From NCBI GenBank assembly GCA_002269645.1, contig NIVC01001264.1, forward strand, positions 261,684 to 325,683: a stretch of DNA of 64,000 bases. The letters are read 5' to 3'. The translations under genes and the position numbers were made by a program. Shown one piece after another: positions 35,401-64,000 of this stretch. Every line of letters begins with the position of its first letter. Position 1 is the first letter of the stretch. The notes beneath the pieces are model-generated. The model had not been told where the DNA came from. It saw only the letters and a list, made by a program, of their open reading frames with translations, and did no database searches. Origin of the DNA: Macrostomum lignano (taxonomy: Eukaryota).

Positions 35401-38400
35401 ACAAAATTTTAGTTCATGTAGACGGGAAATCCTAGCCCCCTCCCGTTGGGAGCCAAAAAATGCAAATATAAGTCTGAATTGACGCTACTGGTATGCTCTA
35501 CGTTACAGAACGCATCGCGCTGAAAGAGGTTTTGCCTAAGATGAATTCGATTAAGAAAGTCTGACTTCTCAAAGCTGAAGTAAAGAATGGCGTAGAGAGG
35601 ACCGCTAGCAAAAGAGGACAGTGAGAGGACAGTGAATGCAGGTGACTGACGGTTTGAAGTTTGACGTGATTTCAGTTAATAGTCTATGGTATTTCCACTG
35701 CGGCGAAAAAATGAGTGCCTGACTGCGGTGCCAAAATGAGTGCCTGACTGCGGTGCCAAAATGAGTGCCTGCGGCGCCAAAATGAGTGCCTGACTGCGGT
35801 GCCAAAATGAGTGCCTGCGGCGCCAAAATGAGTGCCTGCGGCGCCAAAATGAGTGCCTGCGATGCCAAAATGAGTGCCTGCGGTGCCAAAATGAGTGCCT
35901 GCGGTGCCAAAATGAGTGCCTGCAGTGCCAAAATGAGTGCCTGCGGTGCCAAAATGAGTGCCTGCGGTGCCAAAATGAGTGCCTGCGGTGCCAAAATGAG
36001 TGCCTGCGGTGCCAAAATGAGTGCCTGCGGTGCCAAAATGAGTGCCTGACTGCGGTGCCAAAATGAGTGCCTGCGGTGCCAAAATGAGTGCCTGCGGTGC
36101 CAAAATGAGTGCCTGCGGTGCCAAAATGAGTGCCTGCGGTGCCAAAATGAGTGCCTGCGGTGCCAAAATGAGTGCCTGCGGTGCCAAAATGAGTGCCTGA
36201 CTGCGGTGCCAAAATGAGTGCCTGCGGTGCCAAAATGAGTGCCTGCGGTGCCAAAATGAGTGCCTGCGGTGCCAAAATGAGTGCCTGCGGTGCCAAAATG
36301 AGTGCCTGCGGTGCCAAAATGAGTGCCTGCGGTGCCAAAATGAGTGCCTGCAGTGCCAAAATGAGTGCCTGCGGCGCCAAAATGAGTGCCTGCGATGCCA
36401 AAATGAGTGCCTGCGGCGCCAAAATGAGTGCCTGCGATGCCAAAATGAGTGCCTGCGATGCCAAAATGAGTGCCTGCGATGCCAAAATGAGTGCCTGCGA
36501 TGCCAAAATGAGTGCCTGCGGTGCCAAAATGAGTGCCTGACTGCGGCGCTAAAATGAGTGCCTGCAGGGCCAAATTGAGTTCTAACAAAACCGATTCTCA
36601 AATTAAAGTACATGCAGCAATTTAGTCATGTACATGTAGAAGATTTTGCTTTCCCTCCACCTTAAATTCCAAAAGATAATAAGATTAAAAAACCCAATAA
36701 CAACTGTGAAAACTTGCTCACGAAAACTTTACCGCCGACTTTTTCAATTATCAATTTTTTAGCACTTCTAGGATTTGAAATATTTTCTTCCAGAATCATG
36801 TCTTAGATCATTTCTCCTGGTTTACCGTCTCATTTTTGTGTAATTCCCTCACAACTCGCCATCTGCAGCCAGTGTCGGTCACCGTGTCCGTACTGACGAT
36901 GACACTGAACTCGGTTGAGCGCCTACTAGCAGTCTGCTTCCCGATGAAAGTGAAAACAACTAAAAAACGAGTAGGCAGCCTCATCATGCTGGCCTGGACC
37001 ATTGCTCTGGCGTCAAAGCTGCACTACCCCTTCACTATGGAGGCGGTCCCGTTCCCCAATCTGCCAAACGACACCGCCTTGCTGACCTCCTGCCGCTCCA
37101 ATTGGAAACAGCTGGACCAGAACGGCACCGTCTTTATCAATTTTGAAATTGGCGCCAGCATTCTTGATTCCCTGCTGTTCTTTGTCCTGCCGTTCGCATG
37201 GATGCTGGTGGCCTACAGCATGGTGTGTCATCGCCTGTGGCATGCTTCTGTGCCTGGGGAGGCCTCGCATGTTCAGCAGCGCAGTGAGAATTTTTTGTGC
37301 TTTTCAGTATATTGTACAAGTGTCTTGGCGTGCCCCTGGTGCTAAAGCCCCTGGTGCAAAAGACCCTGGTGCTAAAGCCCCTGGTGCTAAAGACCCTGGT
37401 GCTAAAGCCCCTGGTGCTGAAACCCCTGGTACTAAAACCCCTGGTGCTAAAGACTCTGGTGCTAAAACCCCTGGTGCTAGAGCCCCCTGGTGCTAAAGAC
37501 CCCTGGTGCTAAAGCCCCTGGTGCTAAAGCCCCTGGTGCTAAAGCCCATTGGTGCTGGCGCCCCTTGGTGCTAAAGCCCCTGGTGCTAAAGCCCCTGGTG
37601 CTAACATCCCTGGTGCTAAAGCCCCTGGTGCTAACATCCCTGGTGCTAAAGCCCCTGGTGCTAACATCCTGGTGCTAAAGCCCCTGGTGCTAAAGCCCAT
37701 TGGTGCTGGCGCCCCTTGGTGCTAAAGCCCCTGGTGCTAAAGCCCCTGGTGCTAAAGACTTCTGGTGCTAAAGCCTCATGCATTTGGTTAATTTAAAAAT
37801 CATCCCATACGAGCACCTGATGCACTTGCTGTACACCAGGCAGACCCAGCCACCATCGTGCTGGCAGCAGCCGCATCTCCGGATCTGGCCGGAAGTCGAC
37901 ATCCAGCGCTTTGCCAGCTTCCGCGGCTGCCTCGGTAGTCTCTCCGGACTCAACACTGGCTCAGCGGAGGCGCACCGCCCTGATGCTGGTGTCCATCGTG
38001 CTCATCTTCTTCGTGTGCAACCTGCCTGTGCACATTATGCGAGTGGCGTGAGTGCCTTTCGGGTCTGTTGTAGATTCGGCTGCACATATGCTCAAATGGT
38101 AGGCATATCTACTCTAATGAGATTCGTCTCTATATTCAAATGAGAACCGTATTTACTCAGATGAGTACCAATGCCTACCTAGATGAGTACAGATGTCTAC
38201 TCAGATGAGTACCAATGCCTACCTAGATGAGTACAGATGTCTACTCAGATGAGTACCAATGCCTACTCAGATGAGTACCAATGCCTATTCAGATTCAGTA
38301 CCAATGCCTACTTAGTTGAAACGACGTTGGACTCAAAGAGTGCTCAAATCTAACAAAAATAAAGTTCGACATGTCTCTCTCTTTCTCAAATAATTTTCAG

Positions 38401-44883: not shown

Positions 44884-45135
44884 TGTGCAACCGACAGCTC
44901 AGCCGCAGCTATTGCGCGGCGCATCTGAAGGCTGCGTACGGCTGTTCAGTCCAAGGACTGGGGGGTCGCCACACACACAGCCTCAATTATCCCAGCTAAT
45001 GCTGGCACCCATTTTACAGCTGGGTGAACTGAAGCAATGCAGAGTTGTCTTGCTCAAGGGCACAAATTCTTCCGATTTACGACTGGATCGAGAATCGAAC
45101 TCACGAGTGTCAGTCGTGAATACGACTGCAACCCT
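44884..45135 (-). mobile_element. Same SINE family, diverged head
   Basis: Near-identical tail and body to the 23067-23334 copy (GTGCAACCGACAGCTCAGCCGCAGCTATTGCGCGGCGCATCTGAAGGC...). Confidence 0.8.
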
Positions 45136-48052: not shown

Positions 48053-50546
48053 TTAATATTCGTCAGGCTCGCCGTTGTCGGCGGCCTCTGGCGGGGCGAA
48101 GCCCTCCTCAGTCTGGTACAGCACGTCCAGAATGCGGCGAATCTGTTCGCTGTCCTCGGACTCCTGGCAGATGATCTCCACGCTGCGCAGCTTGTTAAAA
48201 TAGAAGTCCCGCTCCTTCATCAGGCCGTCAATGCTCTGCTGGTCTTCGTTGTGCTGCTGGTTCAGGTCGTCCACCTGGGGAGGGCGGGCCGGCGAATGGG
48301 GAGGATTAGGTGGCTGATGGTCCTGGAGGTGTGGGATTAAGCTTGCTGCTAGGTGTGGGATTAAGCTTGCTGCTAGGTGTGGGATTGAGCTTGCTGCTAG
48401 GTGTGGGATTGAGCTTGCTGCTAGGTGTGGGATTAAGCTTGCTGCTAGGTGTGGGATTAAGCTTGCTGCTAGGTGTGGGATTAAGCTTGCTGCTAGATGT
48501 GGGATTAAGCTTGCTGCTAGGTGTGGGATTAAGCTTGCTGCTAGATGTGGGATTAAGCTTGCTGCTAGGTGTGGGACTAAGCTTGCTGCTGGGTGTGGGA
48601 TTAAGCTTGCTGGTGCTGGTGTGGGTTTAAGATTGCTGGTGTGGGATTAAGCTTGCTGATGGATGTGGGATTAAGCTTGCTGCTGGGTGTGGGATTAAGC
48701 TTGCTGCTGGGTGTGGGATTAAGCTTGCTGGTGCTGGTGTGGGTTTAAGATTGCTGGTGTGGGATTAAGCTTGCTGATGGATGTGGGATTAAGCTTGCTG
48801 GTGCTGGTGTGGGATTAAGCTTGCTGGTGCTGGTGTGGGATTAAGCTTGCTGCTAGGTGTGGGATTAAGCTTGCTGCTGGGTGTGGGATTAAGCTTGCTG
48901 GTGCTGGTGTGGGATTAAGATTGCTGGTGTGGGATTAAGCTTGCTGCTGGGTGTGGGATTAAGCTTGCTGCTGGGTGTGGGATTAAGATTGCTGGTGTGG
49001 GATTAGGCTCACTGGTGCTGGTGCTGGCTGAAACACAAGTACGCACCTGGATACGCAGTTCGGCCATCTCAGCCTCCAGCCGCTGCTGGTTAGCATTGGG
49101 AGCCGCTGCCGGCTGGTGGGCCGGAGCTGGCGGATGCGCTGGCGCCGGGGCGGCAGCGGCTCTTGTTGGCACCGGCTTCGGCGGCGTCCGATTCGGCTGC
49201 CGCATGCCCCGCCGGCGCCGGCAGGGGCGCGGCCAGCAGCTGGGCCGGCGGCAGGCGCCCGGTTGTCGCCTCTAGCAGCAGCCGGAGCCGCCGCAGGCTG
49301 ACTGTGCGCGCCGGCGGGCCTGGCCTTGCCGGAGCCGGTGATTGGCTCGCCGCCGCGGGCAGCCAGGGCGTCGTACTCGATTCCGGTGTAATTGGCGTCG
49401 AAGAATCGTTTGAACCATTGCACGAATTCGAAGTTGTCTTGGAAACGCGCTTTGACCAGGCGCTCGATTGGTACCTCCTGGGTAATAGTTTGATGGTTGA
49501 AATCGTTTTGGTGGAAACTTTCAACTAATTCTGGAGTTTGGAGGGAATTCCCGCAGTGAATGACCTTGGGGGAACTCTAATCATACTTAGAATGGAAGTC
49601 CCGCAGTGAATGACCTTGGGGGAACTCTAATCATACTTAAAATGGAAGTCCCGCAGTGAATGACCTTGGGGGAACTCTAATCATACTTAGAATGGAATTC
49701 CCGCAGTGAATGACCTTGGGGGAACTCTAATCATACTTAAAATGGAAGTCCCGCAGTGAATGACCTTGGGGGAACTCTAATCATACTTAAAATGGAAGTC
49801 CCGCAGTGAATGACCTTGGGGGAACTCTAATCATACTTAGAATGGAAGTCCCGCAGTGAATGACCTTGGGGAACTCTAATCATACTTAGAATGGAAGTCC
49901 CGCAGTGAATGACCTTGGGGGAACTCTAATCATACTTAGAATGGAATTCCCGCAGTGAATGACCTTGGGGGAACTCTAATCATACTTAAAATGGAAGTCC
50001 CGCAGTGAATGACCTTGGGGGAACTCTAATCATACTTAAAATGGAAGTCCCGCAGTGAATGACCTTGGGGGAACTCCAATCATACTTAAAATGGAAGTCC
50101 CGCAGTGAATGACCTTGGGGAACTCCAATCAAACTCACAATGGAATTTCCGCAGTGAACGACCCTGGGGAACTCCATATCTCACCTTATCAACGCCGTGT
50201 TTTTTAAACAGCGCCTGCAGCACTTTGAAATTGCTGATAAACTCGTGCTCCAATTTGGTATTAAATTTCACCTTTTTAAAGGGCAGAGTACCTGAATAAT
50301 GATGAATTTGATGATGTTAGAATAAGTAAAAAACAAAAACACTGCATTATTTAATAAATGAATAATGTAAAACGTACCCGGAAACAGCATGTCCATAAAT
50401 TGGCAATAGACAGCCCCAGAGGCTAGTTCTTCAATTTTGCCTAAATTGGCCTGCAAACAGGTATTAATCCAATCCAGGATGTCATGCCTACTCAAATTAT
50501 CAGTTGTTTGCGATGTCGAGTGAACGTTGACAGCTTGCTGGGCCAT
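48053..50546 (-). CDS. MAPRE1: Microtubule plus-end-binding protein EB1 (MAPRE family), 4 coding exons
   Basis: Exons 50546-50378, 50291-50185, 49477-49047 and 48274-48053. CH domain [12 protein letters not shown]...[53 protein letters not shown]; EBH domain [18 protein letters not shown]; acidic tail ending DEY. Confidence 0.95.
48330..49015. repeat. 24-bp minisatellite (GTGTGGGATTAAGCTTGCTGCTAG), EB1 intron 3
   Basis: Fills nearly the whole intron. Confidence 0.9.
49545..50172. repeat. 50-bp minisatellite, EB1 intron 2
   Basis: AATGGAAGTCCCGCAGTGAATGACCTTGGGGGAACTCTAATCATACTTA[A/G] repeated about 12 times. Confidence 0.92.
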
Positions 50547-51642
50547 ACTTATTAATGAAGTTATGCTCTGCTGCTTCTGCTAGCTGAAAATAACAATTTA
50601 TGCAGTTTGTGCATACTGTGGCAGTGAAACCTACAGCAGATACCACAGATACTGGAATAACTAGATGGGCTACTCAAGCACATTTGCGTGTAAGCTACTT
50701 TCAGTTCAGTAGTAGGTTAGACAGATGCATTTTATGCCATGGCTCATTTATTGGCTCTTACCCACCTCCCAGCTTAAACCCTCAAACTGTGCCTTTCCCA
50801 CTAACCCCCCTGCTGCCCTGCCCCAATTTTTATTGCCCAGAGGTCTGGCCAATGTACATTACTGCTGAACCAATTAGCCAGTTGTTTATGCCTGCAAGCT
50901 TGGGGGCTTCTAAACTTATTAAAGTCATTTCAGCTGCCTTTATTTTATTATAAAATAGCTTATAAAAATTGAGCTTGCCTTTATGATTGTTAAAATTAGA
51001 GGTGCTAACAACAAACAGTTTTTAATATTTTCATCATATTAATATTTAGATTAAAAAAACATAGTTGCAACTTTTAGGCAGTCTTTAAAATGAAATTTTT
51101 AATAGCATAAAATTAAGCATAGTGATGAAATGCTATTAAATACTTAATCAGTAGTATATACTATGATCCTAAGTACACAAGAAAAATACAAGAATATAAT
51201 CAATAAGAACAAGCTAAATATAAATGCTAAATCAGGCCTAGCAACAAAAAAATAAACAAAAAACTATATAATAGGCCTATGCTATACTAGGCCTAGTTAA
51301 TCATCATATTTATTATTTATATTGTTATTAATTTCACTTTTTTATAAAAATATCAGGCAGCTTGCACTTGCAGTGCAAGAATTAGAGATCCAAATATCAA
51401 TGACCTTATCCTTGGTTGGTATTGGTATTGTATACTGTTATACTAGCTTATATATATCCAGGCTAAAAAGCATAGCCTAGACCCAATGGTATTCTTGTTA
51501 GGCACTTTTGTTATATGACCCCCGTGTAAAAGATACAGTCAAAGAATAGAAACCAGATGAAACATTATCCATGAGTCAAAGGCATTGCATTAAGGCAGTT
51601 TCAATTGATTTCTATTTGAAGTGAGTTCAACCAAAAAGAGTC

Positions 51643-52201
51643 TCTATATTCACTTTCATTATACAATCATTTAAATGGAGGAAATGTATGCAAAGGCCAA
51701 AGGGATCAGATAACAAAACTTGGGCTTTTTTCATCAATTTCGTAATATGATCCCCCAAGTCAAAATTTTCTTTGCAAGGGATTGTATATCAAAAATGAAA
51801 TCAAGGTATCGCACTTGTAGATGAAGTAAAGATAGTTCATTCATACTAGGCCTATCTAATAATTCCATGCCTGACCCCTTTCCTCACTTTCGTTTTACAA
51901 TCCCCTTACAGTATGGACAATATTGTTTCACACTATAGTGTATTGGGGATCATATAACAAAAGTGAGGGGGGTTTCAAAAAAGAAAAGGGAGGGATACCA
52001 AAAAAATCACAACTTATTTTTGTGGAATCTCATATTAGGTAGCCTAGACAAGGGGTTAAACAAGGTATATGATCCCTTTCAAACAAATTTTTGACTGGGG
52101 GATCATATTACAAAATTGATGAAAATCCCAAGTTTCATTATCTGATCCTTTTCCATATATTTCTTCCATTTGAATGATTGTATAACGAAAGTGAATATAG
52201 A
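51643..52201. mobile_element. MITE-like element with about 120-bp imperfect inverted repeats
   Basis: 51643-51769 (TCTATATTCACTTTCATTATACAATCATT...TATGATCCCCCAAGTCAAAATTT) is the reverse complement of about 52085-52201. Confidence 0.7.
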
Positions 52202-53589
52202 TACATCCTTACTCTTGCTAAGAATCGTGGCTTGCGCTTGACTTAGCTCAGCTGCAGGGGGCATCAGGCAAATGCAACGAGGAGGCAGAGGAGACTGCCC
52301 ATTCTGCTAGCCTTACGATTAAATAGGGTAATTGCACTTCAAATATACTCCACTGATAGGCCTATGCAAATAAGACTCCTATCTTTTACATAGGGGATTG
52401 TATAACAAAAGTGCCATGTTCTATAGAACAATTTCTATAGTTTACAATTCTATAAAATACAATTACCCCTTACAATTGCCCCTTACAATTTCTATAGAAC
52501 TATAGAACCATAGAACCATATGTTCTATATTGTAAGGGGATCATAAAATGACGAAAGAATGCCAACCCAACTATGTTGGCCTAGGCCTAGTCATGGTTAA
52601 TTATAACTAGGCCTGGTATATTTTTTGGGAAATTAGGCCCTATTCTCCTACTAGGCCTTACCTAACCTACTCTAGAATAAAAACCAAAGTTTGCTTTATA
52701 GGCCTATGCTAGAGTGTATTGCTAGGCTAATATAAAACAAAACCATGTAATTTGCATTATTTGTTGTTAAAAATCAATTGACAATTAGGCTCCATGCAAG
52801 CCATAGGCCTAGTCTATGACTCAGGTCTACAAAATTTATCTAGGTTTTCCTATGCTAGAAATTTATGCAGCACAAATGTGATATATTAACATCTCTGATT
52901 AAAAAAAACTAAATATTGAAACAACTAAGCTTATCGAATTAAAAATTTATAACTTAACCTAGCCTTACTTACTATAAAAATTTAATGTCTTCAGTTTTTA
53001 TGTCATAACTGTCATAGGCCTAACATAACATGTCATAACCATAACCGAGTTAAGTTGGAAATTGGAATGGATCGTCCGCAATAGATCGTCGTTAAGTCGT
53101 CGATGACGCAGCTCGAAGAAGCGGACAAACTTTCAAATATCGATAAAAGGGTGGCCAACAGTGTATTAAAACTTTTATAGGCTTTTTTCCAACAAAAAAT
53201 GAAGTGTTAAGTTTCAAGATCAGTCTGATCGCATAGTAAAAAGTTCAAAGTTTTGTTTTAGTGTGTTTAAACCCGGAACCTGCTGCTTAATTTGTACATT
53301 TGTTTAAAGACTAAAAAATGTTTGATAGGGGGCAAGCTATACCAAGCACTACAACCCAAAAGTGGAAAGAAAATAGACCTGGCATAGTTGCAGGCCAAAA
53401 AAGTATGGCCCAATTTTTTTGGCCGCGGCTGAGGGGGAAGGGCATATGGCTCTCCAATTGCCCCCCCCCTGGATCCGCGCCCCTGAATTTTTGCTGGGTG
53501 TGCACAGATTAGAAATGGTTAGAGAAAATTAAACAGTCATAATTAGGGTTATTCAATGCAATTAAGTTGCATCTGCTCAAACCATGCAC

Positions 53590-53830
53590 TTGCAGGTCTG
53601 GGCTGTAGAAGTAGATCGAGAATGGTCGTCGCGAGCGGGATCGAGCTCTTGAAGCGCTCGATCCTCCTCTCCGGCCAGGAGTTCCCCACCAAACCTAGCG
53701 AGCATTGTACATGTACTTTCCGGGGCGTTGTGATGATGGAGAATGATGCCCCGAGCTCGAGTCCTTTTTTGCGACGCCTGCTGCAGGAGAGAGCGCACAG
53801 CAATTTCTGGCAGGATTAATATGTATCGCC
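53590..53830 (-). mobile_element. Decayed mariner-like transposase fragment
   Basis: QKRTRARGIILHHHNAP resembles mariner KRP..GVILHHDNARPH, and YSPDL follows downstream in a shifted frame. Confidence 0.5.
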
Positions 53831-55742
53831 ATGCGCGCTGCTGCTCTCTCGCCGAAGATTCGATGGTGGGATCCACCAGCTGGAGAGACTAGGCTGCAAC
53901 TACTTTAATTTTGTTGTTCTCTGAGTTAACTGAAGATCTAGTAAATATAAAGCTCATTACCGCTGACAATTCCCAGGCTGAGTTTGACTTGGCCACCATT
54001 GAATTTGCTGCGGGTACCACATGTCCACGAGCCTCCTGATCCAGCTCCGGAGTCAACTGATGGGACACTCATTGCGAGCAGAAATCAATTGCTCAGGTTT
54101 AGCCTTGAGTACAGGGGTCACAGTCGCATCGCAACCTCTGTTTCTATTGGGCCACAGTGACTTCAGGCATTTTTCTTACAAAACCGCGCTATTTCATTCA
54201 ACAGCGCATTTTGATGCAGACGTAAAAGCAACCCTCAGGCAGCAGTGGTGCAGTACACCATACCTAACATTTTGGGGTCTACTCTCTTTAGTAAAAGTTC
54301 ATGGTTGCCAGCACACACTAGTACGTCGCATGATACTTGCACCAGTAATAATCATGCGTTACACCGCATTCCGACACCCAGACGCGTCAGAATTAGGAGC
54401 GGCAGCACCAAGGGGCCGACCATATTATGCAGCTGCACCTGATCTACACTTGACGTAATTGCTGTAGGTACAATAAATGCAGGGTGCACAAGGTCACATG
54501 CACATGCAAACTGATATGCGCATACATTTTGCGAGCAAAATTAATGCAACAGACTGCTATACATTCATTATATCATGTCATGTAAATATCATGTGCATGT
54601 AAAACTAAAAGTACATGTCCTGTTTTGACGCCTAAATATATCCGTCGTCTACCGGAAGAAGAAAAATTACTTGTAATTTTTACATCTAAACTGTACTATA
54701 TGTCTATACAGTATATCTAATCACAACTAAGGACCACTAGAAGTTACCCTTGTATCAAGACGTAGCGTGCTTAGATGCACGCATTGCGGAATTATTTATA
54801 GCCGCTTGTTTCAATTGCAGCTGAAGTTCAATGGTACAACGGGTACCTCAAAAGGTATCATCTAGGTACTAACGAGTAGCAAAAGCTCGAAACATGCCCC
54901 TCAAATGGAATGGCGCCTAAAGCCCGCACCCCAAGAAATCAATTTCAAGCTGTGCAAGAATAGTCGAAGAAAACTGCACCGGAAAGTCAAGGCACCTGCA
55001 GGCAAACCTGTCCTGACCTCTACGGTTGAGTAGTTTGTTTTAAAATATTCAAGCAATTTAATGTATGAGATGGTTTACGGCAAACATCAGAAAATCTCTG
55101 AGAAACTATAGACCATATTTGCTTGAGATTTGACAATATTTGCATTTGGCGAACAATCAAGAAGCCTAAAATGATGACGGCTTGAGCTGGATTTAAGAGT
55201 TGCAGTAGGGCGCCAACGGCAGTACTTTAAACTGCTGACTCTCCCATTCGACCTGCAGTTACCGCAGGTTTCCTGAGTTTTTCCATAGTCAGAGAAAATA
55301 AGACCGAACTCTGCTATAACAGTATACGTCACCGCTACTCTCTATCTTCTCTGCGTCTTCTCTTCTTTCCACTTAAAAAACAGGCCTCAGTGCTCACTCC
55401 GTTTAGCTTGTCCTTTTCTTTAGCATTGGCAGATTAGAACTGATGAAGAGAGAAATTTTCTCACGTGACCATCATAGCTCTACTTTTTCAGCCTACAGCC
55501 TAGAGCTGAGCTGATGGTGCAGCGGAAAAGATTGGATAGAGAATAAAACGCAGGAGAAGCTTTCATGACGACAGACGCGGTCAGCTGCACAGCTTTAATT
55601 GCCAATCGAAAAGAGCTCACACTCCGACAACTAGTACAATTGAGGGCCAAAAAAAACTTTACAGTAACCATAGTCTACTCGTAAAACATTGACAGACAAA
55701 GCTAGACAAGTTTCCTAATCAGGTCTAATAAGATCAAACGCA

Positions 55743-58700
55743 ATGTCGTCGCCAGTGGAGTCAGCGAAGCGCGATCTGGCTCGTGCACTTCGCTCAGAGG
55801 AGCCTCATCGAGTCAAAGCGATACTTCGGTCGCCAGTTGCCGACCTGGCTTGGCTAGACAAGCCGCTAGACAGGTAACTGCGGTTAAATGTACATACTAC
55901 GCACAATCTGTAGAAAACGTTGGGAGCACTGAATATACTGTACCAATACGTCCAGTATTTATAAGCTGCAGTACGCACCTCTAACTTTCAGTTCGTTGCA
56001 GCTTGATAGGGGCTGCAGCATTTTCTGGCAGCAGCTTGAAAACCTGCAGGGTTAAGACCATAGACTATAGCTTCTACTGCTCTAAAGCATAATCTGACTG
56101 ATGTGGTTGCTATGCTATAATGTCTGTGGCACCAAGGGGCACCAAGGGGCTTTAGCACCAAGGGGCTTTAGCACCAAGGGGCTTTAGCACCAAGGGCTTT
56201 AGCACCAAGGGGCTTTAGCACCAAGGGGCTTTAGCACCAAGGGCTTTAGCACCAAGGGGCTTTAGCACCAAGGGGCTTTAGCACCAAGGGGCTTTAGCAC
56301 CAAGGGGCTTTAGCACCAAGGGGCTTTAGCACCAAGGGGCTTTAGCACCAAGGGGCTTTAGCACCAAGGGGCTTTAGCACCAAGGGGCTTTAGCACCAAG
56401 GGGCTTTAGCACCAAGGGGCTTTAGCACCAAGGGGCTTTAGCACCAAGGGGCTTTAGCACCAAGGGGCTTTAGCACCAAGGGGCTTTAGCACCAAGGGGC
56501 TTTAGCACCAAGGGGCTTTAGCACCAAGGGGCTTTAGCACCAAGGGGCTTTAGCACCAAGGGGCTTTAGCACCAAGGGGCTTTAGCACCAAGGGGCTTTA
56601 GCACCAAGGGGCTTTAGCACCAAGGGGCTTTAGCACCAAGGGGCTTTAGCACCAAGGGGCTTTAGCACCAAGGGGCTTTAGCACCAAGGGGCTTTAGCAC
56701 CTAGGGGCTTTAGCACCTAGGGGCTTTATCACCAATGGGCTTTAGCACCAAGGGGCTTTAGCACCTAGGGGCGCCAGCCGCTTTATTTAGTTTAATCCCT
56801 TCTTACTAAAATAGCTTGGTTCTCTTAGTTCGGAATGTACGACTAAACGGATGCATATTGCAATTTAACGTGTTCGTTCACAACAGAGACGGCAGCTGCG
56901 CTCTGCACATCGGCTCCTATTGCGGCCAGGAGGTTGGCGTTCACGCCTTGCTAGAATTCGGCTGCGACCCGAACGTCACCAATCAGAACGGAGAGACTCC
57001 GCTGCACGTGGCAGCCGAGCAGCGGTTCGAGCACATGATCGACCTGCTGGTCGATGCCGAGGCAATCCGGCTTGATGCGGCTCGAAAGCTGGACAGGCGG
57101 ACTGCGCTGCACATTGCCGCCAGTCACGGCTGTTGCGACGGCGTGCGAAGACTTCTGGAAGCCGGAGCTGGCATCGATGTTCGGGATCGGGACGGCAACA
57201 CACCGGTGTTCCTGGCTGTCCAGAACAACAAGTGAGGATTTAGTTTACCTGATGGGTAGCCACGCTTTGTACTTCAGTAGAAGGACGCACCAAAACAAGA
57301 GACATCTTGACAATAATTTCCCGCAGACACCGCGTAGTTCACGAGCTGGTTTCTCGGGGCGCTAATTTGAAGCTGAAGAACAACGGCTTGCAGACTTGTT
57401 TGGCATTTGCCATGAAGCAGAGCCAAGATAAAGCCATGATCAAACTGCTTGTTGAGCGCAAGTCCAACATGGCTCCTCAGCCTGGCACTAGCAGGCAGGC
57501 AGCCGCTCGAGCTACCCGAATTGACAATGCTGCACAGAAGCAACAGTCGATGGCAGGTAGAGATCTGCCTAATCAGGGTAGATTTTTTATGACCGAGTCG
57601 CATAGTAACAAACCTGACCGGCCGAATCTCACACCCAGCAGACAGCTATGGCAGCAACACCCTCAGGTATGGCAGTTTCTAACCGATTGTATAAATCTGT
57701 TCTGTAGTAGGTTTCGATGAGCTTAATTTATTCACTAGCTAAAGGGGGTTGTGGTAGCCCTGTGGTTTGAGCGTCGCCTGCGTCGGAGTCCCGACTTGAA
57801 AGGTTGGGGGTTCGATTCTCGACCCACTCGGAACAGTTTGTGTCCTTGAGCAAGACACTTAACTCTGCATTGCTTCAGTTTACCCAGCTGTAAAATGGGT
57901 GCCAGCATTAGCTGGGGTAATTGAGGGTGTGTGTGGCGACCCCCCCACCCCCAGTCCTTGGACTGAACGCTCAATATCTGGGGCTGAGCTGTCGGTTGCA
58001 CATCTGCCCATTATTAATATTATTATGACTATCAAATCTCATAGCCGCAGACTCGACATCAACAATCGGTCATTCCGGAAGAGCCAACAAAGCATCCTCA
58101 AGCAGCCCAGCACCCTCAGTACCACCAGCAGAAGCAGCAACAGCAGCAACAACAGCAGCACAGGCTTAGCAACGCAAATTACTCGCGCCAACGCGACACG
58201 AAAAGCGCCGGTGTTCAAGCAACCCCGGCCGAATCAGACAAAGAAGATGATGACGAAGAGGATGCATACAGCATGGACAGCAAAATCCGCGGCTTGTGCA
58301 TCATCGTGAACAATCAGGATTACTTCAACTCCGACGATTTCAAAGAACGCGCCGGAACAGATCTGGACGAGAGGTGCTTGGAGCGACTATTTAAATCGTT
58401 GCGCTTTCACGTCAAGATATTCAAGAATCTGGACGCCAAGGATATCTACTGGAACCTCAGCAACTATGCCAAGAGCGATCACAGCGGGTATGACTGTTAC
58501 GTCTGCTGCATCCTGTCTCACGGCACTCTCGGCGGGATCTACGGAGTTGATGGACGAGTGCAGAAACTGTCCGACCTCACCGTGATGCTCAGCAGCACCA
58601 ATTGTCCGTCGTTGGCCGGCAAGCCAAAACTGTTCTTTATCCAAGTGAGTTTCACAGCTGTACTGGTCTCGGCAATCCTCTACTTTCGCACGTTTAATTA

Positions 58701-59556
58701 TTTTTCGAAAATAATGACTTGCCCTTAATTACCGCGAGTAAATATTTGAACTCGCGCGAGTGTACGACGTGGTAGTGTATCGATTTTATGTCTATGTATA
58801 CTAGTTTGAGGCGGCTATTGGCTATGTCTATGGCCAAAACCTGAAATTGCTCTCTGTTCAAGTTTTGGCCTTAGACAATCGCTCCCTGTTTCTTGAGCAA
58901 CAATGGGCCCATGCTAAGGCCCGGTTCAGGGCTATGCATGGCACATCTAAGGCCCTGTTCGACACCCACCTAGATGAGTTTCTGTGGCGCCGTTGCCACC
59001 CGCGCAACACCTTCGGCAAAATACTTTTCTGGGTGGTGCACTACTACGATGTTTAGTGCAACCGAACGTGGTAGCAAACTCGCTCATACCTGAGATGAGT
59101 CTCAAAGTCTTGAAGTTGACCGCCTGAACTTCGAAACCCATGCATCTTTAGGCTTGTCGAGGCCGCTGTCTCCAGCGAGGCGCGCACCATTTCACCGGCG
59201 GTCGGCAAGCCAGCGATCGCGACCCGGCCATGATCCCGATGGCCAACCACGAGACGGACGCGCTGTCAGCCGACCCAGACCAAGAGTACATCCTGCCTGA
59301 TCACGGCGACTTCTTGATTGGCTACGCCACGGTGGCTCAGCACATCGCCCAGCGGCACCGGGAGCAGGGCTCCGTGTACGTGCAGACCCTCTGCGACGTT
59401 ATCGAACGCGGCAGGCACAAGGAGGACCTGCTCAGTCTGCTCACCAAAGTCAAATACCGCGTGTCGAAGCACGTGTTCCACAATGAAGACGGCAGTGTGT
59501 TCGTTCAGATGCCCGAAGTAAAGGAAACTCTGCGCAAGAAGATCTACTTTAAGTAG
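55743..59556 (+). CDS. Ankyrin-repeat prodomain caspase (caspase-8-like catalytic domain), 5 coding exons, about 604 aa
   Basis: Exons 55743-55873, 56887-57231, 57327-57666, 58051-58644 and 59152-59556 join in frame (1815 nt). About 5 ANK repeats (GETPLHVAA, RRTALHIAA, GNTPVFLAV), a Q-rich/acidic linker, p20 (RGLCIIVNN, ERAGTDLD, CCILSHG, CPSLAGKPKLFFIQ/ACRG) and p10 (ILPDHGDFLIGYAT, GSVYVQTLC, QMPEVKETLRKKIYF). Confidence 0.88.
56130..56772. repeat. 16-bp minisatellite (TTTAGCACCAAGGGGC), ANK-caspase intron 1
   Basis: About 39 near-perfect copies. Confidence 0.95.
57748..58030 (+). mobile_element. Same SINE family, full length, in caspase intron 3
   Basis: GGTAGCCCTGTGG...GGGTTCGATTCTCG head, TGTGTCCTTGAGCAAGACACTTAACTC...CAGTTTACCCAGCTGTAAAATGGG core, and an ATT-rich tail. 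Confidence 0.82.
58895..59056 (+). mobile_element. Merlin/IS1595(ISXO2)-like transposase C-terminal fragment in caspase intron 4
   Basis: EQQWAHAKARFRAMHGTSKALFDTHLDEFLWRR...FGKILFWVVHYY* matches the (IE.LW..AK)...HG.S...L..YLDEF.WRR tail of Merlin/IS1595 transposases. Confidence 0.7.
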
Positions 59557-60092
59557 CAACTAAAGCACTTCATTTAAAATCTGCTCAACAATTAATAGTC
59601 TAGTATACCTTTCAAAATTTCCCAATAATAGCATAGCAAAAGCCTAAACAATTCTTGACAATGAAAGCTATCCTAGAAACAAAAATTGCCCCGTTAAACT
59701 TCTGCAACATTTACGGACCCTTTTGAGGGTGATATCCATGTACAATACAAGCTACTTACAATCAGCTATGTGGAGCAATAATGAGTAGAAATCGCTATTA
59801 CATAACGGCTATATGTACATGTATTATATGCATGTATAGACAAAGCTAGCTAAACTGTCTCAGTTCATGTACTTTTAAAGGACTTATCTAATTTGGTAAT
59901 GTCAGACTATAAGGGTGTAAAATAAAAACGCACTTCTATCCCAATTTTTATATATTATTCTTCGACTTTTTAGAGGTTCTCAATAAAAATCCTATGTCTC
60001 GGTTGCAGAGAGCATCCATAAGTATTTATTAAAGTAGAATATTGTTTCATCTGGCTGCTATGCCGTTGCGTCATTACCAATTTGCTCAGTTT

Positions 60093-60672
60093 CAGTCACA
60101 TGTATACAACAACAACAACAACAACAAGGTACTGCTCCCGCCGGCCACGCAGTAGCCAGAAAGGGGGAGCAGTCAGAAAGCGCGTCTCTGGGCCATTGCC
60201 CTCAGGAAGTCGCATCCCCCTGCTTGGTCCTGGGCGCCAGCGTCACTCAGAAGTCGGTCAGGGTATCGCACCGTTCGCCCTTGGCCTCGCCTCCGCGGTC
60301 CCTGCAGCTTGAGCAGCAGCACGTCGTGTAGCGGCTCAGGACAGCGGGCCTCCGACCGGATGACGTGGCCAGCCAGTCGAAGTCGCCGCCGCGCAGCAGG
60401 TCAGAAGGCCGCGTCAGGCGCGCCCTAGTGTAGAGCGCGGCGTTGGTCTCGCTGCCTGGGCCGCTGCGCACTCCGAAAGCCGCACGCAGCATTGCCGCAT
60501 GCGCAGCGTCCAGCTGCCTCTCCAAGGCGTCCGTCAGGGTCCAAGTCTCGGCGTTGTACAACAGGACAGTCTCGACGACTGCCTGAAACAGCCGAGCCTT
60601 GAGACCGTCGTCCAGGGCCTCAGATTGGAGCACGGAGCGCACAGGTCGAAATGCGGCCCAGTCACATGTATA
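60093..60672 (-). mobile_element. 5'-truncated RTE-like non-LTR retrotransposon with 14-bp TSD
   Basis: The minus-strand peptide RLFQAVVETVLLYNAETWTLT...LL(fs)RRRRLRLAGHVIR is typical of the LINE ORF2 post-RT region. It has a (GTT)n 3' tail at 60107-60128, and CAGTCACATGTATA is duplicated at 60093-60106 and 60659-60672. Confidence 0.85.
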
Positions 60673-60724
60673 TAAATTTCTTATCATAGCTATTAATATT
60701 TATAGAATAGTACATACATTTCTG

Positions 60725-60922
60725 GCCCCATCAGTGACATCTGCGTCAATGAGCCTGACAGTCTTCCTGACCCCATCAGTGACATCTGCATCAATGAGCC
60801 TGACAGTCTTCCTGACCCCATCAGTGACATCTGCATCAATGAGCCTACAGTCTTCCTGACCCCATCAGTGACATCTGCGTCAATGAGCCTACAGTCTTCC
60901 TGACCCCATCAGTGACATCTGA
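60725..60922. repeat. 44-45-bp tandem repeat
   Basis: CTGACCCCATCAGTGACATCTGCATCAATGAGCCTGACAGTCTTC repeated about 4.5 times. Confidence 0.85.
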
Positions 60923-61094
60923 GCAAAAGTCAATTTCGGTTTAATTGTCAAATACTATCGCAGAGCTGCATTTCTGCACAAATTTCAATGTACATCTTAG
61001 CCACATAACACAGACACTCCCTCTACGAAACAAAGGCTTATCACATAGGCATAAGCTTTAACACAGAAGCCCCCTTTTCATTAGCTAGATGATC

Positions 61095-61103
61095 TCTCTT
61101 CCT

Positions 61104-61171
<68 letters not shown>

Positions 61172-61640
61172 TCTCTCCAACACAGACTCTTTCTGTCTTC
61201 AACACAGACTCTCTCTCTCTCCCTCTCTCTCTCTACCACTCTCTCTCTTCAACACAGACTCTCTCTCTCTCTCCCTCTCTCTCTCTACCACTCTCTCTCT
61301 TCAACACAGACTCTCTCTGTCTTCAACACAGACTCTCTCTCTCTCTCTCTCCCTCTCTCTCTCTACCTCTCTCTCTCTCTCTCTCTCTTCAACACAGACT
61401 CTCTCGGTCTTCAACACAGACTCTCTCTCTCTCTCCCTCTCTCTCTCTACCTCTCTCTCTCTCTTCAACAAAGACTCTCTCTGTCTCCAACACAGACTCT
61501 CTCGGTCTTCAACACAGACTCTCTCTCTCTCTTCAACACAGACTCTCTCTCTCTCTTCAACACAGACTCTCTCTGTCTTCAACACAGACTCTCTCCGTCT
61601 TCAACACAGACTCTCTCCGTCTTCAACACAGACTCTCTCG
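61095..61640. repeat. (CT)n microsatellite interspersed with CAACACAGACT
   Basis: Direct inspection. Confidence 0.9.
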
Positions 61641-61965
61641 TCAACACAGGAAACGTATTTCAACATGTGTCAACGACCGTAAGAAATCAAAATGAGATTG
61701 GAATGAAAAACTCAAGCTAATTAACAGATATTTTCTGTATGCTTGGAACAATAAGTTGCTGGTAGAAACTAACGTACGGGAATGAGATTTAAATTGTTTA
61801 GCTGTATTTGCCTTTTAGTATCTTTTTAATAAAAACCAAAGATAACCCAATCGATATTGAATAACTGATCGACAACTGAGGATAATTTAGACAACAAACA
61901 GGGGAATTGAATTTAGTTAGTTATATAAGTTGTTGATCGGCTTCAAGCCACACTGATGCATTCGC

Positions 61966-62314
61966 TCAATCGTGCATCGGAAACGTGAACTGGAAGTTCT
62001 TGCAGATGCAATGGCAAACACTTCGCTTAGGCGGCCCGGCCATGGCGCAGGTCGGCACCCTGTAGCAGGAGAGCCGGCATACATTCTGCCAGTAGAGCTG
62101 CGTGTTAACTGCAAGGTGAGGCGAAATCAGATTTATTGAAAGCTACTGTATAACAAAAATATCGAATCGGCAATGTCTTACTCCAGTTGATCGGCCAACG
62201 CTTTTTCATCGACAGCTGCGGCACGTCGTTCTTGCCTTTGGCGCTGTCCGCACCAGTCAGCAGACAAGCCAGCATGGCCATGGCAGCCAGGCAATAGACA
62301 GTAGCAGCCTGCAT
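61966..62314 (-). CDS. Small secreted cysteine-rich prepropeptide (91 aa), 2 exons; function unknown
   Basis: Exons 62314-62182 and 62108-61966, with a 73-nt GTAAG...TTGCAG intron. Translation: MQAATVYCLAAMAMLACLLTGADSAKGKNDVPQLSMKKRWPINWINTQLYWQNVCRLSCYRVPTCAMAGPPKRSVCHCICKNFQFTFPMHD*. It has a hydrophobic signal peptide, a KKR site, six Cys and an upstream TATA box. Confidence 0.68.
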
Positions 62315-62402
62315 GATTGCGTTGCTAGAAATTTGGTCAGCGAGTTTTCTACAAAACTGACAAGTCTGGGGCTGAATAAAACTGTCCCCTGGCTTAAGAT
62401 GT

Positions 62403-62441
62403 CTTTTATAGACGATGGTCGGGATTTTCACCAGCCAATCA
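62403..62441 (-). promoter_or_regulatory. TATA box and CCAAT box upstream of the Cys-rich peptide gene
   Basis: CTATAAAAG on the minus strand at 62411-62403, AGCCAATCAG at about 62432-62441, and an Inr-like ACAGTT about 27 nt downstream of the TATA. Confidence 0.5.
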
Positions 62442-64000
62442 GAAATTGTCAATGAATTCATCAACGCTTGAAACGTTCAAAGGTTATAAGAGATTAAGGC
62501 AAGATGGGAGAAACTCTAAATAAAAAACCAAGAAATTTCGGGAAATCCTGAAGAACCTGAGTGATCGGGTGGGGTGTTTCATAGATGTTACAATTAGTGA
62601 CCAGTGATAGTGACAAGCGATAATTTATGAGGTTACAAGTGCTGCAGAGTTTCGTTTCACAGAATGATTTGCAAATCTAGCGACAAGGTACAAGCTCTCT
62701 GAGTAGTGACTCAAAATATGTCTATGGCCAAATCAACGGGTGCCTCGCTCGAACCCCCCATCTCGAAAGCTTGCTTAAGATCTATGGTAAGATCTGTCTT
62801 ACGCAGTCGTCCCGTGTATAGCATAAGATTAATCGAAGGGCGTTTCTGAAAGTCATCTTTGTCGCAGCTTTTGTGATTGACAGGTGCTTCTGAATTCCTT
62901 GCAGAAGTTGCTCCTTCTTAAGGGTGAAGAAATTCCGCACACGCTTGACCATTCTTAGTAAATCCGTGTGTAAAAATGTAACAAGTCCGTACCAAGGCGC
63001 AAGTTTACGATCTCACATAAAAAGAGCCAGAAACATACGAAGCTATAGTTTCGAGAAACAGCTTCCTCGCATAAGTTTACGCGGTCGTAGATTTGCGCCA
63101 AATCTTACGTACGGCCCAGTTGCGAGAACTTTGATCGCAACGCCTACGCATGACCGACCCAGCTTACGTCTATTGCCAGCGCGTAAGTTGCTTTCGAGAA
63201 AGACCCCCAGGACCCTGAATATGCTCTGAAAAGTGCTCTATGAAACACTCTGTGAAGCACAACAAATCTCTGCACTCTGATCGGGGGTGCCATGCAGACT
63301 CCTCGCCTTTCACCAAAGCTCCGACACTCTTGAATCAGTGTGATACCGATACCGGAATTTTCGGGAAATGAAAAACCTAATGATTATCACAGAGAAAGCG
63401 CGGCTTGCAAATTCCGGTTGACCCCCACTGAGCTCCTGGCTCTGGAAAACTTCAGAGAATGAGCTGAGACACGGCTTCAGTGTTCAGCGGTCACTGTACC
63501 AGTGGACTTCATAGTTTCAAGCTTCAACGTAGCTATACATAGATAGTCAATCCAATCTATTTATAACCATTTTTACCGAATCTTTTCTTCAATCTTCACG
63601 TCGATATCCTAGTCTTTTAGTCAGAAATAGTCGCAAGTCTGCACAAAAACACCTGTAACCAACTGCTTGATTCGTATTCCGTAGACAACGGTGCATATAA
63701 CTATAGGCCCACGCATACATTTTTATCTCAACAAAACACCTGCGAAATCCCTCCTTTACCAGCGAGCCCGCATCAATTTTTATCCAGAGAGAGAGTAATT
63801 ACCGTGGGCGTCAATTTTCAGCAATTTTCTGTTGCTTTATTTGCTTCTCAGTGTCGGGATGTGGGTGACAGCCATTTTTTTCACCTAAGCCGCCTCACAA
63901 TAATGGCCACCCACGGCTTACAGTTTTTCGACGCTGAAATCAGTAGGAACAGCCTTTCTAGATTCTTAATTTCGTATGACAAGCTGCTGCTGCTGTAACT

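What the first reader, a model, noticed from the sequence alone, without database searches (positions are those of the whole stretch)
55743..59556. Ankyrin-repeat/caspase fusion: caspase-8-like protease with an ANK prodomain instead of DED/CARD
Seen: five GT-AG exons with matching phases (2,2,0,0) join into one stop-free 604-aa frame. It comprises about 5 ankyrin repeats, a Gln/acidic linker, and a complete caspase p20+p10 with catalytic His (ILSHG), catalytic Cys (FFIQ/ACRG across the last intron) and S1-pocket Arg residues (ERAGTD, AQRHREQGS). Established: long-prodomain animal caspases are recruited via death-fold DED or CARD domains. The stretches CCILSHG, CPSLAGKPKLFFIQ, LPD..DFLIG.AT and QMP...TLRKK resemble caspase-8/10. 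Inference: this is an initiator-type caspase activated on a death-fold-independent, ankyrin-mediated platform, that is, a non-canonical death/immune signalling module. I cannot tell from sequence alone whether this architecture is already described in this lineage.
Basis: partly seen in the sequence, partly recalled or inferred. Interest (0 to 1): 0.9.

Follow-up and report, generated by a model that had tools for sequence, protein, structure and literature searches.

The report
Ankyrin-prodomain caspase of a free-living flatworm
The five-exon gene is real and encodes a catalytically intact caspase-8-like protease with an ankyrin-repeat prodomain, but this "ANK caspase" family is already described in parasitic flatworms; the modest news is that it also occurs in the free-living flatworm Macrostomum lignano, where the literature says it is absent.

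Summary
Five GT-AG exons (55743-55873, 56887-57231, 57327-57666, 58051-58644, 59152-59556; phases 2,2,0,0) give a 604-aa ORF. It has an N-terminal cap plus 5 ankyrin repeats, a 135-aa disordered Gln/acidic linker, and a complete Peptidase_C14 domain (Pfam E=1e-54) with R372, H429, Q470, C472 and R538 intact. The best structural match is caspase-8.

The window is 100% identical to Macrostomum lignano contig NIVC01001264.1. The gene is BOX15_Mlig019067g2 (PAA70133.1, "hypothetical protein"), one of four near-identical copies whose annotation was built from RNA-seq.

The architecture is not new. "ANK caspases" were described in Schistosoma (Lee 2014) and across parasitic flatworms (GBE 2024, PMC11463336). 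That paper states they are restricted to parasites and reports none in M. lignano.

Here the caspase domain groups with neodermatan ANK caspases (NJ bootstrap 94-96%). It shares their signatures (QACRG, A-Q-R, PEV[KR]xTL) and a phase-2 intron at the same position of ANK repeat 4. The family therefore probably predates parasitism.

Activation through ANK-mediated recruitment is plausible but untested. Verdict: a new member of a known kind, of moderate interest.

The parts
55743..55873 (+). Exon 1: ATG and aa 1-43 plus 2 nt; N-terminal helical cap preceding the ANK repeats
   Evidence: Splice solver and translation. An in-frame TAA lies 15 nt upstream. The AF2 model has helices 4-18, 21-29 and 35-39.
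55874..56886 (+). Intron 1 (1013 nt, phase 2), containing a 16-bp minisatellite at 56139-56772
   Evidence: GT..AG borders. TRF reports 39.8 copies of GCACCAAGGGGCTTTA.
56887..57231 (+). Exon 2: ANK repeats 1-3 and the first half of repeat 4 (aa 44-158)
   Evidence: Pfam Ank_2 and Ank hits. AF2 helix pairs 49-67, 82-104, 109-135 and 150-156.
57232..57326 (+). Intron 2 (95 nt, phase 2), inside ANK repeat 4, 13 codons after the 'GNT' motif; same position and phase as in the S. mansoni and T. szidati ANK-caspase genes
   Evidence: Mlig GNTPVFLAVQNN|K, T. szidati GNTALHCAVIDK|L, S. mansoni GNTALHCAVMDK|L, all phase 2.
57327..57666 (+). Exon 3: rest of ANK repeat 4, ANK repeat 5 (to aa ~206), and the start of the disordered linker
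   Evidence: The repeat-5 motif KAMIKLL matches KMLSLL in Trichobilharzia.
57667..58050 (+). Intron 3 (384 nt, phase 0), carrying a ~230-bp interspersed repeat
   Evidence: Further copies lie at window 23068-23318 and 44884-45100.
58051..58644 (+). Exon 4: Gln-rich/acidic linker (to aa 341) and the p20 part of the caspase domain up to FFIQ. Includes R372 (58348-58350), H429 (58519-58521) and Q470 (58642-58644)
   Evidence: pLDDT is below 50 for aa 207-341 and 85-97 from aa 342.
58645..59151 (+). Intron 4 (507 nt, phase 0) splitting the active-site pentapeptide Q|ACRG; not shared with neodermatan ANK-caspase genes or with Lingula or chicken DED-caspase genes
59152..59556 (+). Exon 5: catalytic C472 (59155-59157), intersubunit linker (aa ~483-514) with the HETD506|A site (59248-59262), the p10 part with R538 (59353-59355), and the TAG stop at 59554-59556
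   Evidence: The AF2 loop corresponding to this linker (P0001 residues 483-509) is disordered.
59200..59214 (+). 15-nt in-frame segment (GRQAS) present in this copy (g2) and in g4, absent from the g1 DNA, and omitted from GenBank's CDS of this locus

Best explanation
This is the Macrostomum lignano gene BOX15_Mlig019067g2, a member of the flatworm 'ANK caspase' clade. The polypeptide has an N-terminal cap plus five ankyrin repeats (aa 1-206), a 135-aa disordered Gln/acidic linker, and a complete caspase-8-like p20/p10 domain with an intact catalytic dyad and S1 pocket. That much is shown. Inferred, by analogy with long-prodomain caspases: it acts as an apical (initiator-type) caspase. The ANK domain would replace tandem DEDs as the protein-protein module that concentrates the zymogen on an unknown partner or oligomer. 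The caspase domains would then dimerise and autoprocess in the disordered intersubunit loop, with HETD506|A lying where caspase-8 has its xETD|x site. The enzyme would then cleave downstream executioner caspases. The published survey found neither FADD nor a DED caspase in M. lignano or in parasitic flatworms, so this may be the lineage's substitute for the DED-caspase arm. Because Macrostomorpha and Neodermata share it, the fusion most likely arose in a free-living rhabditophoran ancestor rather than with parasitism. My confidence is about 0.95 in the identity and architecture, about 0.7 in orthology and ancestral origin, and about 0.4 in the activation mechanism.
For: - Gene model and domains.
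- Locus identity: the window is 100% identical to NIVC01001264.1.
- Product: 100% identical to PAA70133.1 apart from the 15-nt segment.
- RNA support: the annotation is RNA-based and cuts units at spliced-leader and poly(A) sites (PMC5730564). The g1 model has the same four junctions.
- Catalytic residues: R372, H429, Q470, C472 and R538 fall on invariant columns.
- Structure: an AF2 caspase domain with pLDDT 85-97; Foldseek's best hit is caspase-8 at TM 0.91. The PDB sequence ranking puts caspase-8 at 171 bits against 132 for caspase-9.
- Orthology with neodermatan ANK caspases: NJ bootstrap of 96% (15 sequences) and 94% (24 sequences including effector caspases). The shared signatures QACRG, A-Q-R and Q.PEV[KR].TL are absent from DED and CARD caspases. 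Both have five colinear ANK repeats, with a phase-2 intron at the same site of repeat 4.
- Selection: exons are 99.1% identical between paralogues against 97.3% for introns, with a rough dN/dS of ~0.3.
- Linker site: HETD|A aligns with LETD|A or ETD|A in chicken, Mytilus and oyster-like caspase-8.
- Literature: ANK caspases are sister to DED caspases and are proposed as initiators; the survey placed only the two planarian DED caspases in the DED clade, reported only a CARD and a kinase-prodomain caspase for M. lignano, and describes FADD as lost in platyhelminths (PMC11463336).
Against: - There is no biochemical or genetic evidence for any ANK caspase, so the activation platform is unknown.
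- ANK-domain similarity between M. lignano and neodermatans is weak (29-40% over 47-62 residues, E about 1e-6 to 5e-4) and not clearly above generic ANK similarity. In PDB searches the M. lignano ANK domain looks like consensus ankyrin or DARPins, which gives no clue to a partner.
- Caspase-domain introns are not shared with neodermatans.
- The phylogeny is distance-based only. It lacks planarian DED caspases and the M. lignano 'kinase-prodomain' caspase that the 2024 paper places as sister to ANK caspases. Deep nodes are unresolved.
- The neodermatan linkers do not conserve the HETD site.
- GenBank's CDS for this copy drops 15 nt that are in its DNA. The supporting transcript was therefore probably of the g1/g3 type, and expression of this particular copy is not shown.
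Confidence: 0.6

Rival explanations
1. Same protein, but the ANK domain is not a recruitment or oligomerisation platform. Instead it acts as an intramolecular regulator (an autoinhibitory cap on the caspase domain released by linker cleavage) or as a substrate or localisation module. The enzyme could then serve non-apoptotic or executioner-like roles.
For: Designed ankyrin-repeat proteins bind and inhibit caspases (Schweizer 2007 and Flutsch 2014, cited in PMC11463336). The pentapeptide is QACRG, as in the caspase-3 sequence aligned here (Mugilogobius casp3 QACRG), not the QACQG of caspase-8. A long, flexible, Asp-rich linker (SDKEDDDEEDA) lies just before p20 and could let the ANK domain fold back, or be cut off. 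ANK repeats are not known to form death-fold-like helical filaments (my own knowledge).
Against: By sequence and fold the caspase domain is clearly closer to caspase-8 and caspase-9 than to effector caspases. Long prodomains are the hallmark of apical caspases. No docking of ANK onto the caspase domain was assessed, because the AF2 output gave no inter-domain confidence and pTM is only 0.49.
Confidence: 0.25
2. The ANK-caspase architecture arose independently in Macrostomum and in Neodermata, by convergent domain shuffling onto a caspase-8-like gene. On this view M. lignano is not a member of the neodermatan ANK-caspase clade and says nothing about the clade's origin.
For: ANK similarity is weak and generic. 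Caspase-domain introns differ. The 2024 paper reports a convergent ANK caspase in the annelid Alitta virens and a different odd prodomain (kinase-like) on an M. lignano caspase that is sister to the ANK clade. Caspase+ANK co-occurrence also exists in gastropod giant proteins.
Against: The caspase domain alone gives 94-96% bootstrap for M. lignano plus neodermatans. Three non-trivial signatures are shared. Both have five colinear repeats, with an intron at the same site and phase in repeat 4; by my rough count the chance of that is about 1-4%.
Confidence: 0.1
3. This particular copy (g2) is a silent or decaying duplicate; only the g1/g3-type copies are expressed.
For: GenBank's CDS for g2 and g4 lacks the 15 nt present in their DNA. 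This suggests the model was transferred from a g1/g3-type transcript. M. lignano DV1 carries large recent duplications (PMC5730564).
Against: The ORF is fully intact and all splice sites are canonical. The only indel is in frame and lies in a disordered loop. Exons are more conserved than introns. g4 is a 99.8% identical second copy.
Confidence: 0.1
4. Gene-model artefact: an ANK gene (exons 1-3) and a caspase gene (exons 4-5, starting at ATG 58273) are separate mRNAs.
For: M. lignano has polycistronic precursor transcripts resolved by spliced-leader trans-splicing. An ATG at 58273 opens the caspase domain. The g4 model starts internally, at M188.
Against: The frame is open across all four introns with compatible phases. 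Exon 3 has no stop before its donor, and the linker is coding-like across intron 3. The TBONE-cut, RNA-based annotation keeps one CDS in g1, g2 and g3. The same fused architecture is annotated independently in at least 5 neodermatan species.
Confidence: 0.04

Closest known systems
Platyhelminth ANK caspases (Schistosoma, Trichobilharzia, Taenia, Mesocestoides and others; Lee et al. 2014; Genome Biol Evol 2024, PMC11463336)
   Same: N-terminal five-repeat ANK prodomain, long disordered linker with an acidic patch before '(Y)Y.M.S', and a C-terminal caspase domain. The signatures QACRG, A-Q-R and PEV[KR]xTL are shared. There is a phase-2 intron in ANK repeat 4. The caspase domain is monophyletic with them.
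   Different: The host is a free-living macrostomid, whereas the literature defines the clade as parasite-restricted. The ANK repeats are close to consensus rather than highly diverged. The linker is 135 aa against ~250 aa. An intron splits Q|ACRG, whereas neodermatans have one at FQ|NR. The intersubunit loop is short and carries a caspase-8-like HETD|A site.
Caspase-8/-10 (DED caspases)
   Same: Best solved match by sequence and by fold (36-43% identity, TM ~0.9). Also shares a long prodomain, an xETD|A site in the intersubunit linker, and CPSLAGKPKLFFIQAC.
   Different: No DEDs. The pentapeptide is QACRG, not QACQG, and the motif is A-Q-R, not S-[YF]-R. No caspase-domain introns are shared with the Lingula or chicken genes. 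It does not group inside the DED clade.
Annelid Alitta virens ANK caspase and other odd-prodomain lophotrochozoan caspases (kinase, TIR, ROC, Z-binding; PMC11463336)
   Same: A caspase with a non-death-fold interaction module as its prodomain.
   Different: The paper treats these as species-specific and of convergent origin. Their sequences were not examined here.
Gastropod caspase-STAND-ANK giant proteins (Haliotis rufescens XP_048241358.1; Batillaria attramentaria KAK7463151.1)
   Same: Peptidase_C14 and ankyrin repeats in one predicted polypeptide.
   Different: These are 1.9-2.0 kaa proteins with ~27 ANK repeats plus an nSTAND3 NTPase (and ZU5 in one), in an NLR-like layout. The caspase is N-terminal in one and C-terminal in the other. 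They may be fused gene models.

Membership tests
Caspase (peptidase family C14A) | Full-length match to the caspase domain profile | tested here: met
   PF00656 E=1.1e-54, profile positions 1-233/233, aa 352-602.
Caspase (peptidase family C14A) | Catalytic His in SHG and catalytic Cys in QACxG | tested here: met
   H429 (ILSHG) and C472 (QACRG) fall on columns invariant in 34 caspases.
Caspase (peptidase family C14A) | S1 pocket residues for Asp (equivalents of Arg179, Gln283 and Arg341) | tested here: met
   R372, Q470 and R538 are aligned and invariant.
Caspase (peptidase family C14A) | Caspase-hemoglobinase fold | tested here: met
   AF2 pLDDT is 85-97 over the domain. Foldseek gives 4ps1 (caspase-8) at E=7.5e-26 and TM 0.91.
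Caspase (peptidase family C14A) | Asp-specific endopeptidase activity | not testable with these tools
   Requires recombinant enzyme and fluorogenic substrates.
Flatworm ANK caspase clade | ANK-repeat prodomain and p20/p10 in one polypeptide, with no DED or CARD | tested here: met
   The paralogue model is RNA-based and has the same junctions.
Flatworm ANK caspase clade | Caspase domain groups with the other ANK caspases | tested here: met
   NJ bootstrap of 96% and 94%, plus shared signatures. The tree is distance-based with limited sampling.
Flatworm ANK caspase clade | Homology of the ANK prodomain itself | tested here: inconclusive
   Five colinear repeats and a shared phase-2 intron in repeat 4, but BLASTP similarity is weak.
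Flatworm ANK caspase clade | Restricted to parasitic platyhelminths (as stated in PMC11463336) | tested here: not met
   The host is free-living M. lignano. This is a claim about distribution rather than a structural criterion, so it argues for revising the claim, not for excluding the gene.
Caspase-8 / DED caspase | Tandem death effector domains in the prodomain | tested here: not met
   No PF01335 hit at E<=1, and the prodomain is ANK.
Caspase-8 / DED caspase | QACQG active-site pentapeptide and placement inside the DED-caspase clade | tested here: not met
   The pentapeptide is QACRG, and the protein groups with ANK caspases, not within DED caspases.
Caspase-8 / DED caspase | Recruitment by FADD | not testable with these tools
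   FADD is reported lost in platyhelminths (PMC11463336).
Initiator (apical) caspase, functional class | Long prodomain carrying a protein-interaction module | tested here: met
   The prodomain is 341 aa with five ANK repeats.
Initiator (apical) caspase, functional class | Activation by induced proximity or dimerisation, and cleavage of executioner caspases | not testable with these tools
   Inference only.

The most novel reading that the evidence does not exclude
The ANK caspase is not an adaptation to parasitism. It is an ancestral rhabditophoran invention, present in Macrostomorpha and Neodermata and lost in (or replaced by the retained DED caspase of) triclads. It took over the apical-caspase role when FADD and DED caspases were lost. 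M. lignano, which has transgenesis and RNAi, would then be the first tractable system in which to find the unknown, death-fold-independent activation platform of a whole caspase class. That class is also present in schistosomes and tapeworms.
Probability: 0.6. Interest if true: 0.5.

Novelty: new member of a known kind. Interest (0 to 1): 0.38.

Why it matters
This finding corrects a published evolutionary claim. [quoted passage not shown] A clear orthologue in an early-branching free-living flatworm moves the origin of the fusion back to a free-living ancestor.

It also has a practical side. No ANK caspase has been studied biochemically, and the parasites that carry them are hard to manipulate. 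M. lignano offers RNAi, transgenesis and regeneration assays for asking what an ankyrin prodomain binds and how a caspase-8-like enzyme is activated without FADD or DEDs.

Beyond that, the gene is an ordinary, already-annotated member of a described family.

Tried and rejected
- **Exact look-up of the spliced 604-aa product.** I worked through P0001 and P0123 instead.
- **Exhaustive phmmer of P0001 against 1.84 billion representatives, meant to map ANK+caspase proteins across taxa.** The top 150 were swamped by giant ankyrin proteins. Only two gastropod caspase-STAND-ANK proteins emerged.
- **Profile of four ANK-caspase protease domains against the 5.8-billion-protein set.** All strong hits (>=305 bits) were neodermatan or unnamed partial contigs. 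No further free-living flatworm was found. The full-length ANK-bearing proteins were oddly missing from the list, so this is a weak negative.
- **Intron conservation in the caspase domain.** The M. lignano Q|ACRG intron is not shared with Taenia, Schistosoma or Trichobilharzia, nor with Lingula or chicken DED-caspase genes. This is uninformative.
- **Looking for a specific partner clue in the ANK domain.** PDB hits are generic ankyrin-R/B, NOMPC, latrotoxin and DARPins. An IkB/Relish-like reading was considered and dropped for lack of any specific similarity.
- **Literature search.** 'Mlig019067' gave no hits. A search for schistosome papers on ankyrin-repeat caspases beyond the 2024 paper found nothing relevant. 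PMC12058154 is unrelated. The supplements of PMC11463336 are not held, so the accession of the M. lignano 'kinase-prodomain' caspase could not be checked.
- **RNA features.** Rfam and ARAGORN scans of 55000-60500 found nothing credible.
- **Intron 4 ORF remnant.** Pfam found no significant hit. My recollection that it resembles an IS1595/Merlin transposase tail stays a lead only.
- **S. rodhaini protein P0005.** It is not on record for locus retrieval.
- **The third large homology search** was deliberately not spent.


Full report

Yes. The five segments are 55743-55873, 56887-57231, 57327-57666, 58051-58644 and 59152-59556. All are bounded by GT..AG and their cumulative phases are 2, 2, 0, 0. 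Joined, they make 1815 nt, which is 604 codons plus TAG. An in-frame TAA lies 15 nt upstream of the ATG.

Pfam finds ankyrin repeats (Ank_2 E=2e-25, Ank E=1e-22) over aa ~50-200. It also finds an end-to-end Peptidase_C14 match at aa 352-602 (E=1.1e-54). Scanned alone at E<=1, the 348-aa prodomain shows only ANK families and no DED, CARD or Death domain.

In an alignment of 34 caspases they fall on invariant columns: R372, H429, Q470, C472 and R538. This is far beyond chance.

**2. What and whose gene is it?**

The protein is 98-100% identical to four Macrostomum lignano GenBank proteins, BOX15_Mlig019067g1-g4. Window 50001-64000 is 100% identical to contig NIVC01001264.1, and the gene span coincides base for base with g2 (PAA70133.1).

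Copy g4 is a 99.8% identical second copy. Copy g1 is a 94-95% identical paralogue, introns included. This fits the recently duplicated DV1 genome (PMC5730564).

GenBank calls the protein 'hypothetical'. UniProt auto-names it 'Caspase-8'.

There is one discrepancy. GenBank's CDS for g2 and g4 is 599 aa because it omits 15 nt (59200-59214, GRQAS). Those bases are present in the g2 and g4 DNA, absent from the g1 DNA, and not flanked by GT-AG. The model was therefore probably carried over from a g1/g3-type transcript. The extra residues lie in the disordered intersubunit loop.

**3. Is the fusion one mRNA?**

I could not see reads, but three lines of evidence argue against a mis-join.
- The GenBank annotation of this assembly was built only from RNA-seq and de novo transcripts. 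Transcription units were cut at experimentally mapped trans-splice and poly(A) sites before ORF calling (PMC5730564). It still keeps one ANK+caspase CDS in g1, g2 and g3.
- The g1 model has exactly the same four junctions.
- The same architecture is annotated independently in Schistosoma mansoni, S. rodhaini, Trichobilharzia szidati and Taenia solium.

Between the window copy and g1, exons are 99.1% identical and introns 97.3%. Nine codons differ synonymously and eight non-synonymously, a rough dN/dS of ~0.3. Both copies therefore appear to be under constraint.

**4. Anatomy**

An AlphaFold2 model of the g1 protein was built from a 34-sequence alignment (mean pLDDT 70.5). It shows four regions:
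- An N-terminal helical cap followed by five helix-turn-helix repeats, aa 1-206 (pLDDT 60-88).
- A disordered linker, aa 207-341 (pLDDT below 50). It contains 27 Gln of 135 residues, a poly-Gln run and SDKEDDDEEDA.
- A confident caspase domain from aa 342 (pLDDT 85-97).
- A disordered intersubunit loop, aa 483-509.

Foldseek's top PDB hits are caspase-8 chains (E=7.5e-26, TM 0.91). By sequence, caspase-8 scores 171 bits against 132 for caspase-9 and ~125-130 for caspase-3/7.

In the intersubunit loop, HETD506|A aligns with the LETD|A or ETD|A of chicken and mollusc caspase-8. This is where caspase-8 autoprocesses; that site assignment rests on my own knowledge.

**5. Is it already known?**

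Yes, as a family. Genome Biol Evol 2024 (PMC11463336) names 'ANK caspases'. It describes them as a maximally supported platyhelminth clade, sister to DED caspases, first noticed in Schistosoma by Lee et al. 2014, and proposed to be initiators with an unidentified activator. No other paper in the searchable library uses the term.

The same paper makes three relevant statements:
- The clade is 'specifically restricted to parasitic platyhelminths' and free-living flatworms lack it.
[quoted passage not shown] The gene in this window contradicts that distribution claim.

**6. Is the M. lignano gene a true member of that clade?**

- *Caspase domain only.* Neighbour-joining with Kimura distances groups M. 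lignano with the neodermatan ANK caspases. Support is 96% (15 sequences, 245 columns, 500 replicates) and 94% (24 sequences including effector caspases, 1000 replicates). The neodermatans alone get 100%. Deeper nodes are unresolved.
- *Shared signatures.* Three are absent from DED and CARD caspases: QACRG (against QACQG or QACGG), A-Q-R at the S1 arginine (against S-[YWF]-R), and Q.PEV[KR].TL near the C-terminus.
- *ANK region.* Both sides have five colinear repeats. A phase-2 intron lies 13 codons after the GNT of repeat 4 in M. lignano, S. mansoni and T. szidati. By a rough count I estimate a 1-4% chance of that coincidence.

Against this, BLASTP similarity of the ANK regions is weak, and the caspase-domain introns differ. 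I rate orthology at about 0.7-0.8.

Macrostomorpha branches before the split of triclads and Neodermata. The taxonomy is; the branching order is from established flatworm phylogenomics, which I cite from my own knowledge. Orthology would therefore place the fusion in a free-living ancestor, with loss in planarians.

**7. How does it most likely work?**

*Shown:* an intact protease with a long ANK prodomain and no death fold.

*Inferred:* it is an apical caspase. Its ANK domain recruits or clusters the zymogen on an unknown partner. The protease domains then dimerise, autoprocess in the loop (the candidate site is D506) and cleave executioner caspases. It would stand in for the DED-caspase/FADD arm, which the published survey did not find in this species.

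The main rival is that the ANK domain is regulatory (autoinhibitory, or targeting substrates or location) rather than a platform. The ANK domain looks like consensus ankyrin and gives no partner clue. Neither reading can be tested computationally here.

**8. Verdict**

The structural interpretation is correct and the mechanistic interpretation is plausible but untested.

This is a new, literature-unrecognised member of a known kind. It has a useful evolutionary corollary and offers a tractable model organism. Interest is about 0.38.

Noticed in passing
window 59200-59214: GenBank's CDS for this very locus (PAA70133.1), and for g4, omits 15 nt (GGTCGGCAAGCCAGC, GRQAS) that are in the genomic DNA and lack GT-AG borders. 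The g1 DNA lacks them. This is probably an annotation carried over from a paralogous transcript.
   Followed up: yes
window 56139-56772 (intron 1); related array at about 37332-37775 on the minus strand: A 16-bp minisatellite, GCACCAAGGGGCTTTA, in 39.8 copies at 98% match. A related array lies elsewhere in the window and in the g1 paralogue's intron 1.
   Followed up: partly
window 57780-58010 (intron 3); copies at 23068-23318(-) and 44884-45100(-): A ~230-bp interspersed repeat with a tRNA-like-looking head. ARAGORN and Rfam find no tRNA. It is probably a SINE-like element of M. lignano.
   Followed up: partly
window 58800-59058 (intron 4): An ORF remnant, ...LEQQWAHAKARFRAMHGTSKALFDTHLDEFLWRRCHPRNTFGKILFWVVHYYDV*. 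From memory it resembles the C-terminus of IS1595/ISXO2-like (Merlin) transposases. Pfam gives no significant hit.
   Followed up: partly
window 50268-50546 (-) and L006 2520-4804 (-): The upstream neighbour on the opposite strand is a CH-domain gene (239 aa, EB1-like first exon). No kinase gene lies next to the caspase gene.
   Followed up: partly
window 60247-60687 (-), 60722-60921, 61093-61640: Downstream of the gene lie a reverse-transcriptase-like ORF remnant (LLYNAETWTLT motif, no Pfam hit), a 45-bp tandem repeat of 4.5 copies, and a long TC-rich microsatellite.
   Followed up: no
P0130 (Haliotis rufescens XP_048241358.1) and P0154 (Batillaria attramentaria KAK7463151.1): Gastropod predicted proteins of 1.9-2.0 kaa combine Peptidase_C14, an nSTAND3 NTPase and ~27 ankyrin repeats (plus ZU5 in one). 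This is an NLR-like caspase architecture, or a fused gene model. I did not search the literature for it.
   Followed up: partly
L002 (Taenia solium), L003 (S. mansoni), L004 (T. szidati): Neodermatan ANK-caspase genes share two further introns. One is phase 0, in ANK repeat 1 (AVE.GF..A|V). The other is phase 0, at FQ|NR.GCD just before the S1 arginine. From that intron onward the rest of the caspase domain lies in a single exon. The S. mansoni RefSeq model P0012 (707 aa) skips parts of p20 and of the linker relative to UniProt P0006 and looks mis-spliced.
   Followed up: partly
PMC11463336 versus GenBank PAA94436.1, PAA70133.1 and PAA88208.1: The 2024 survey used NCBI BLAST and ScanProsite and included M. 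lignano, yet does not list these ANK+caspase proteins. It reports a 'protein kinase-like prodomain' M. lignano caspase as sister to the ANK clade. I could not identify that protein, because the supplements are not held.
   Followed up: partly
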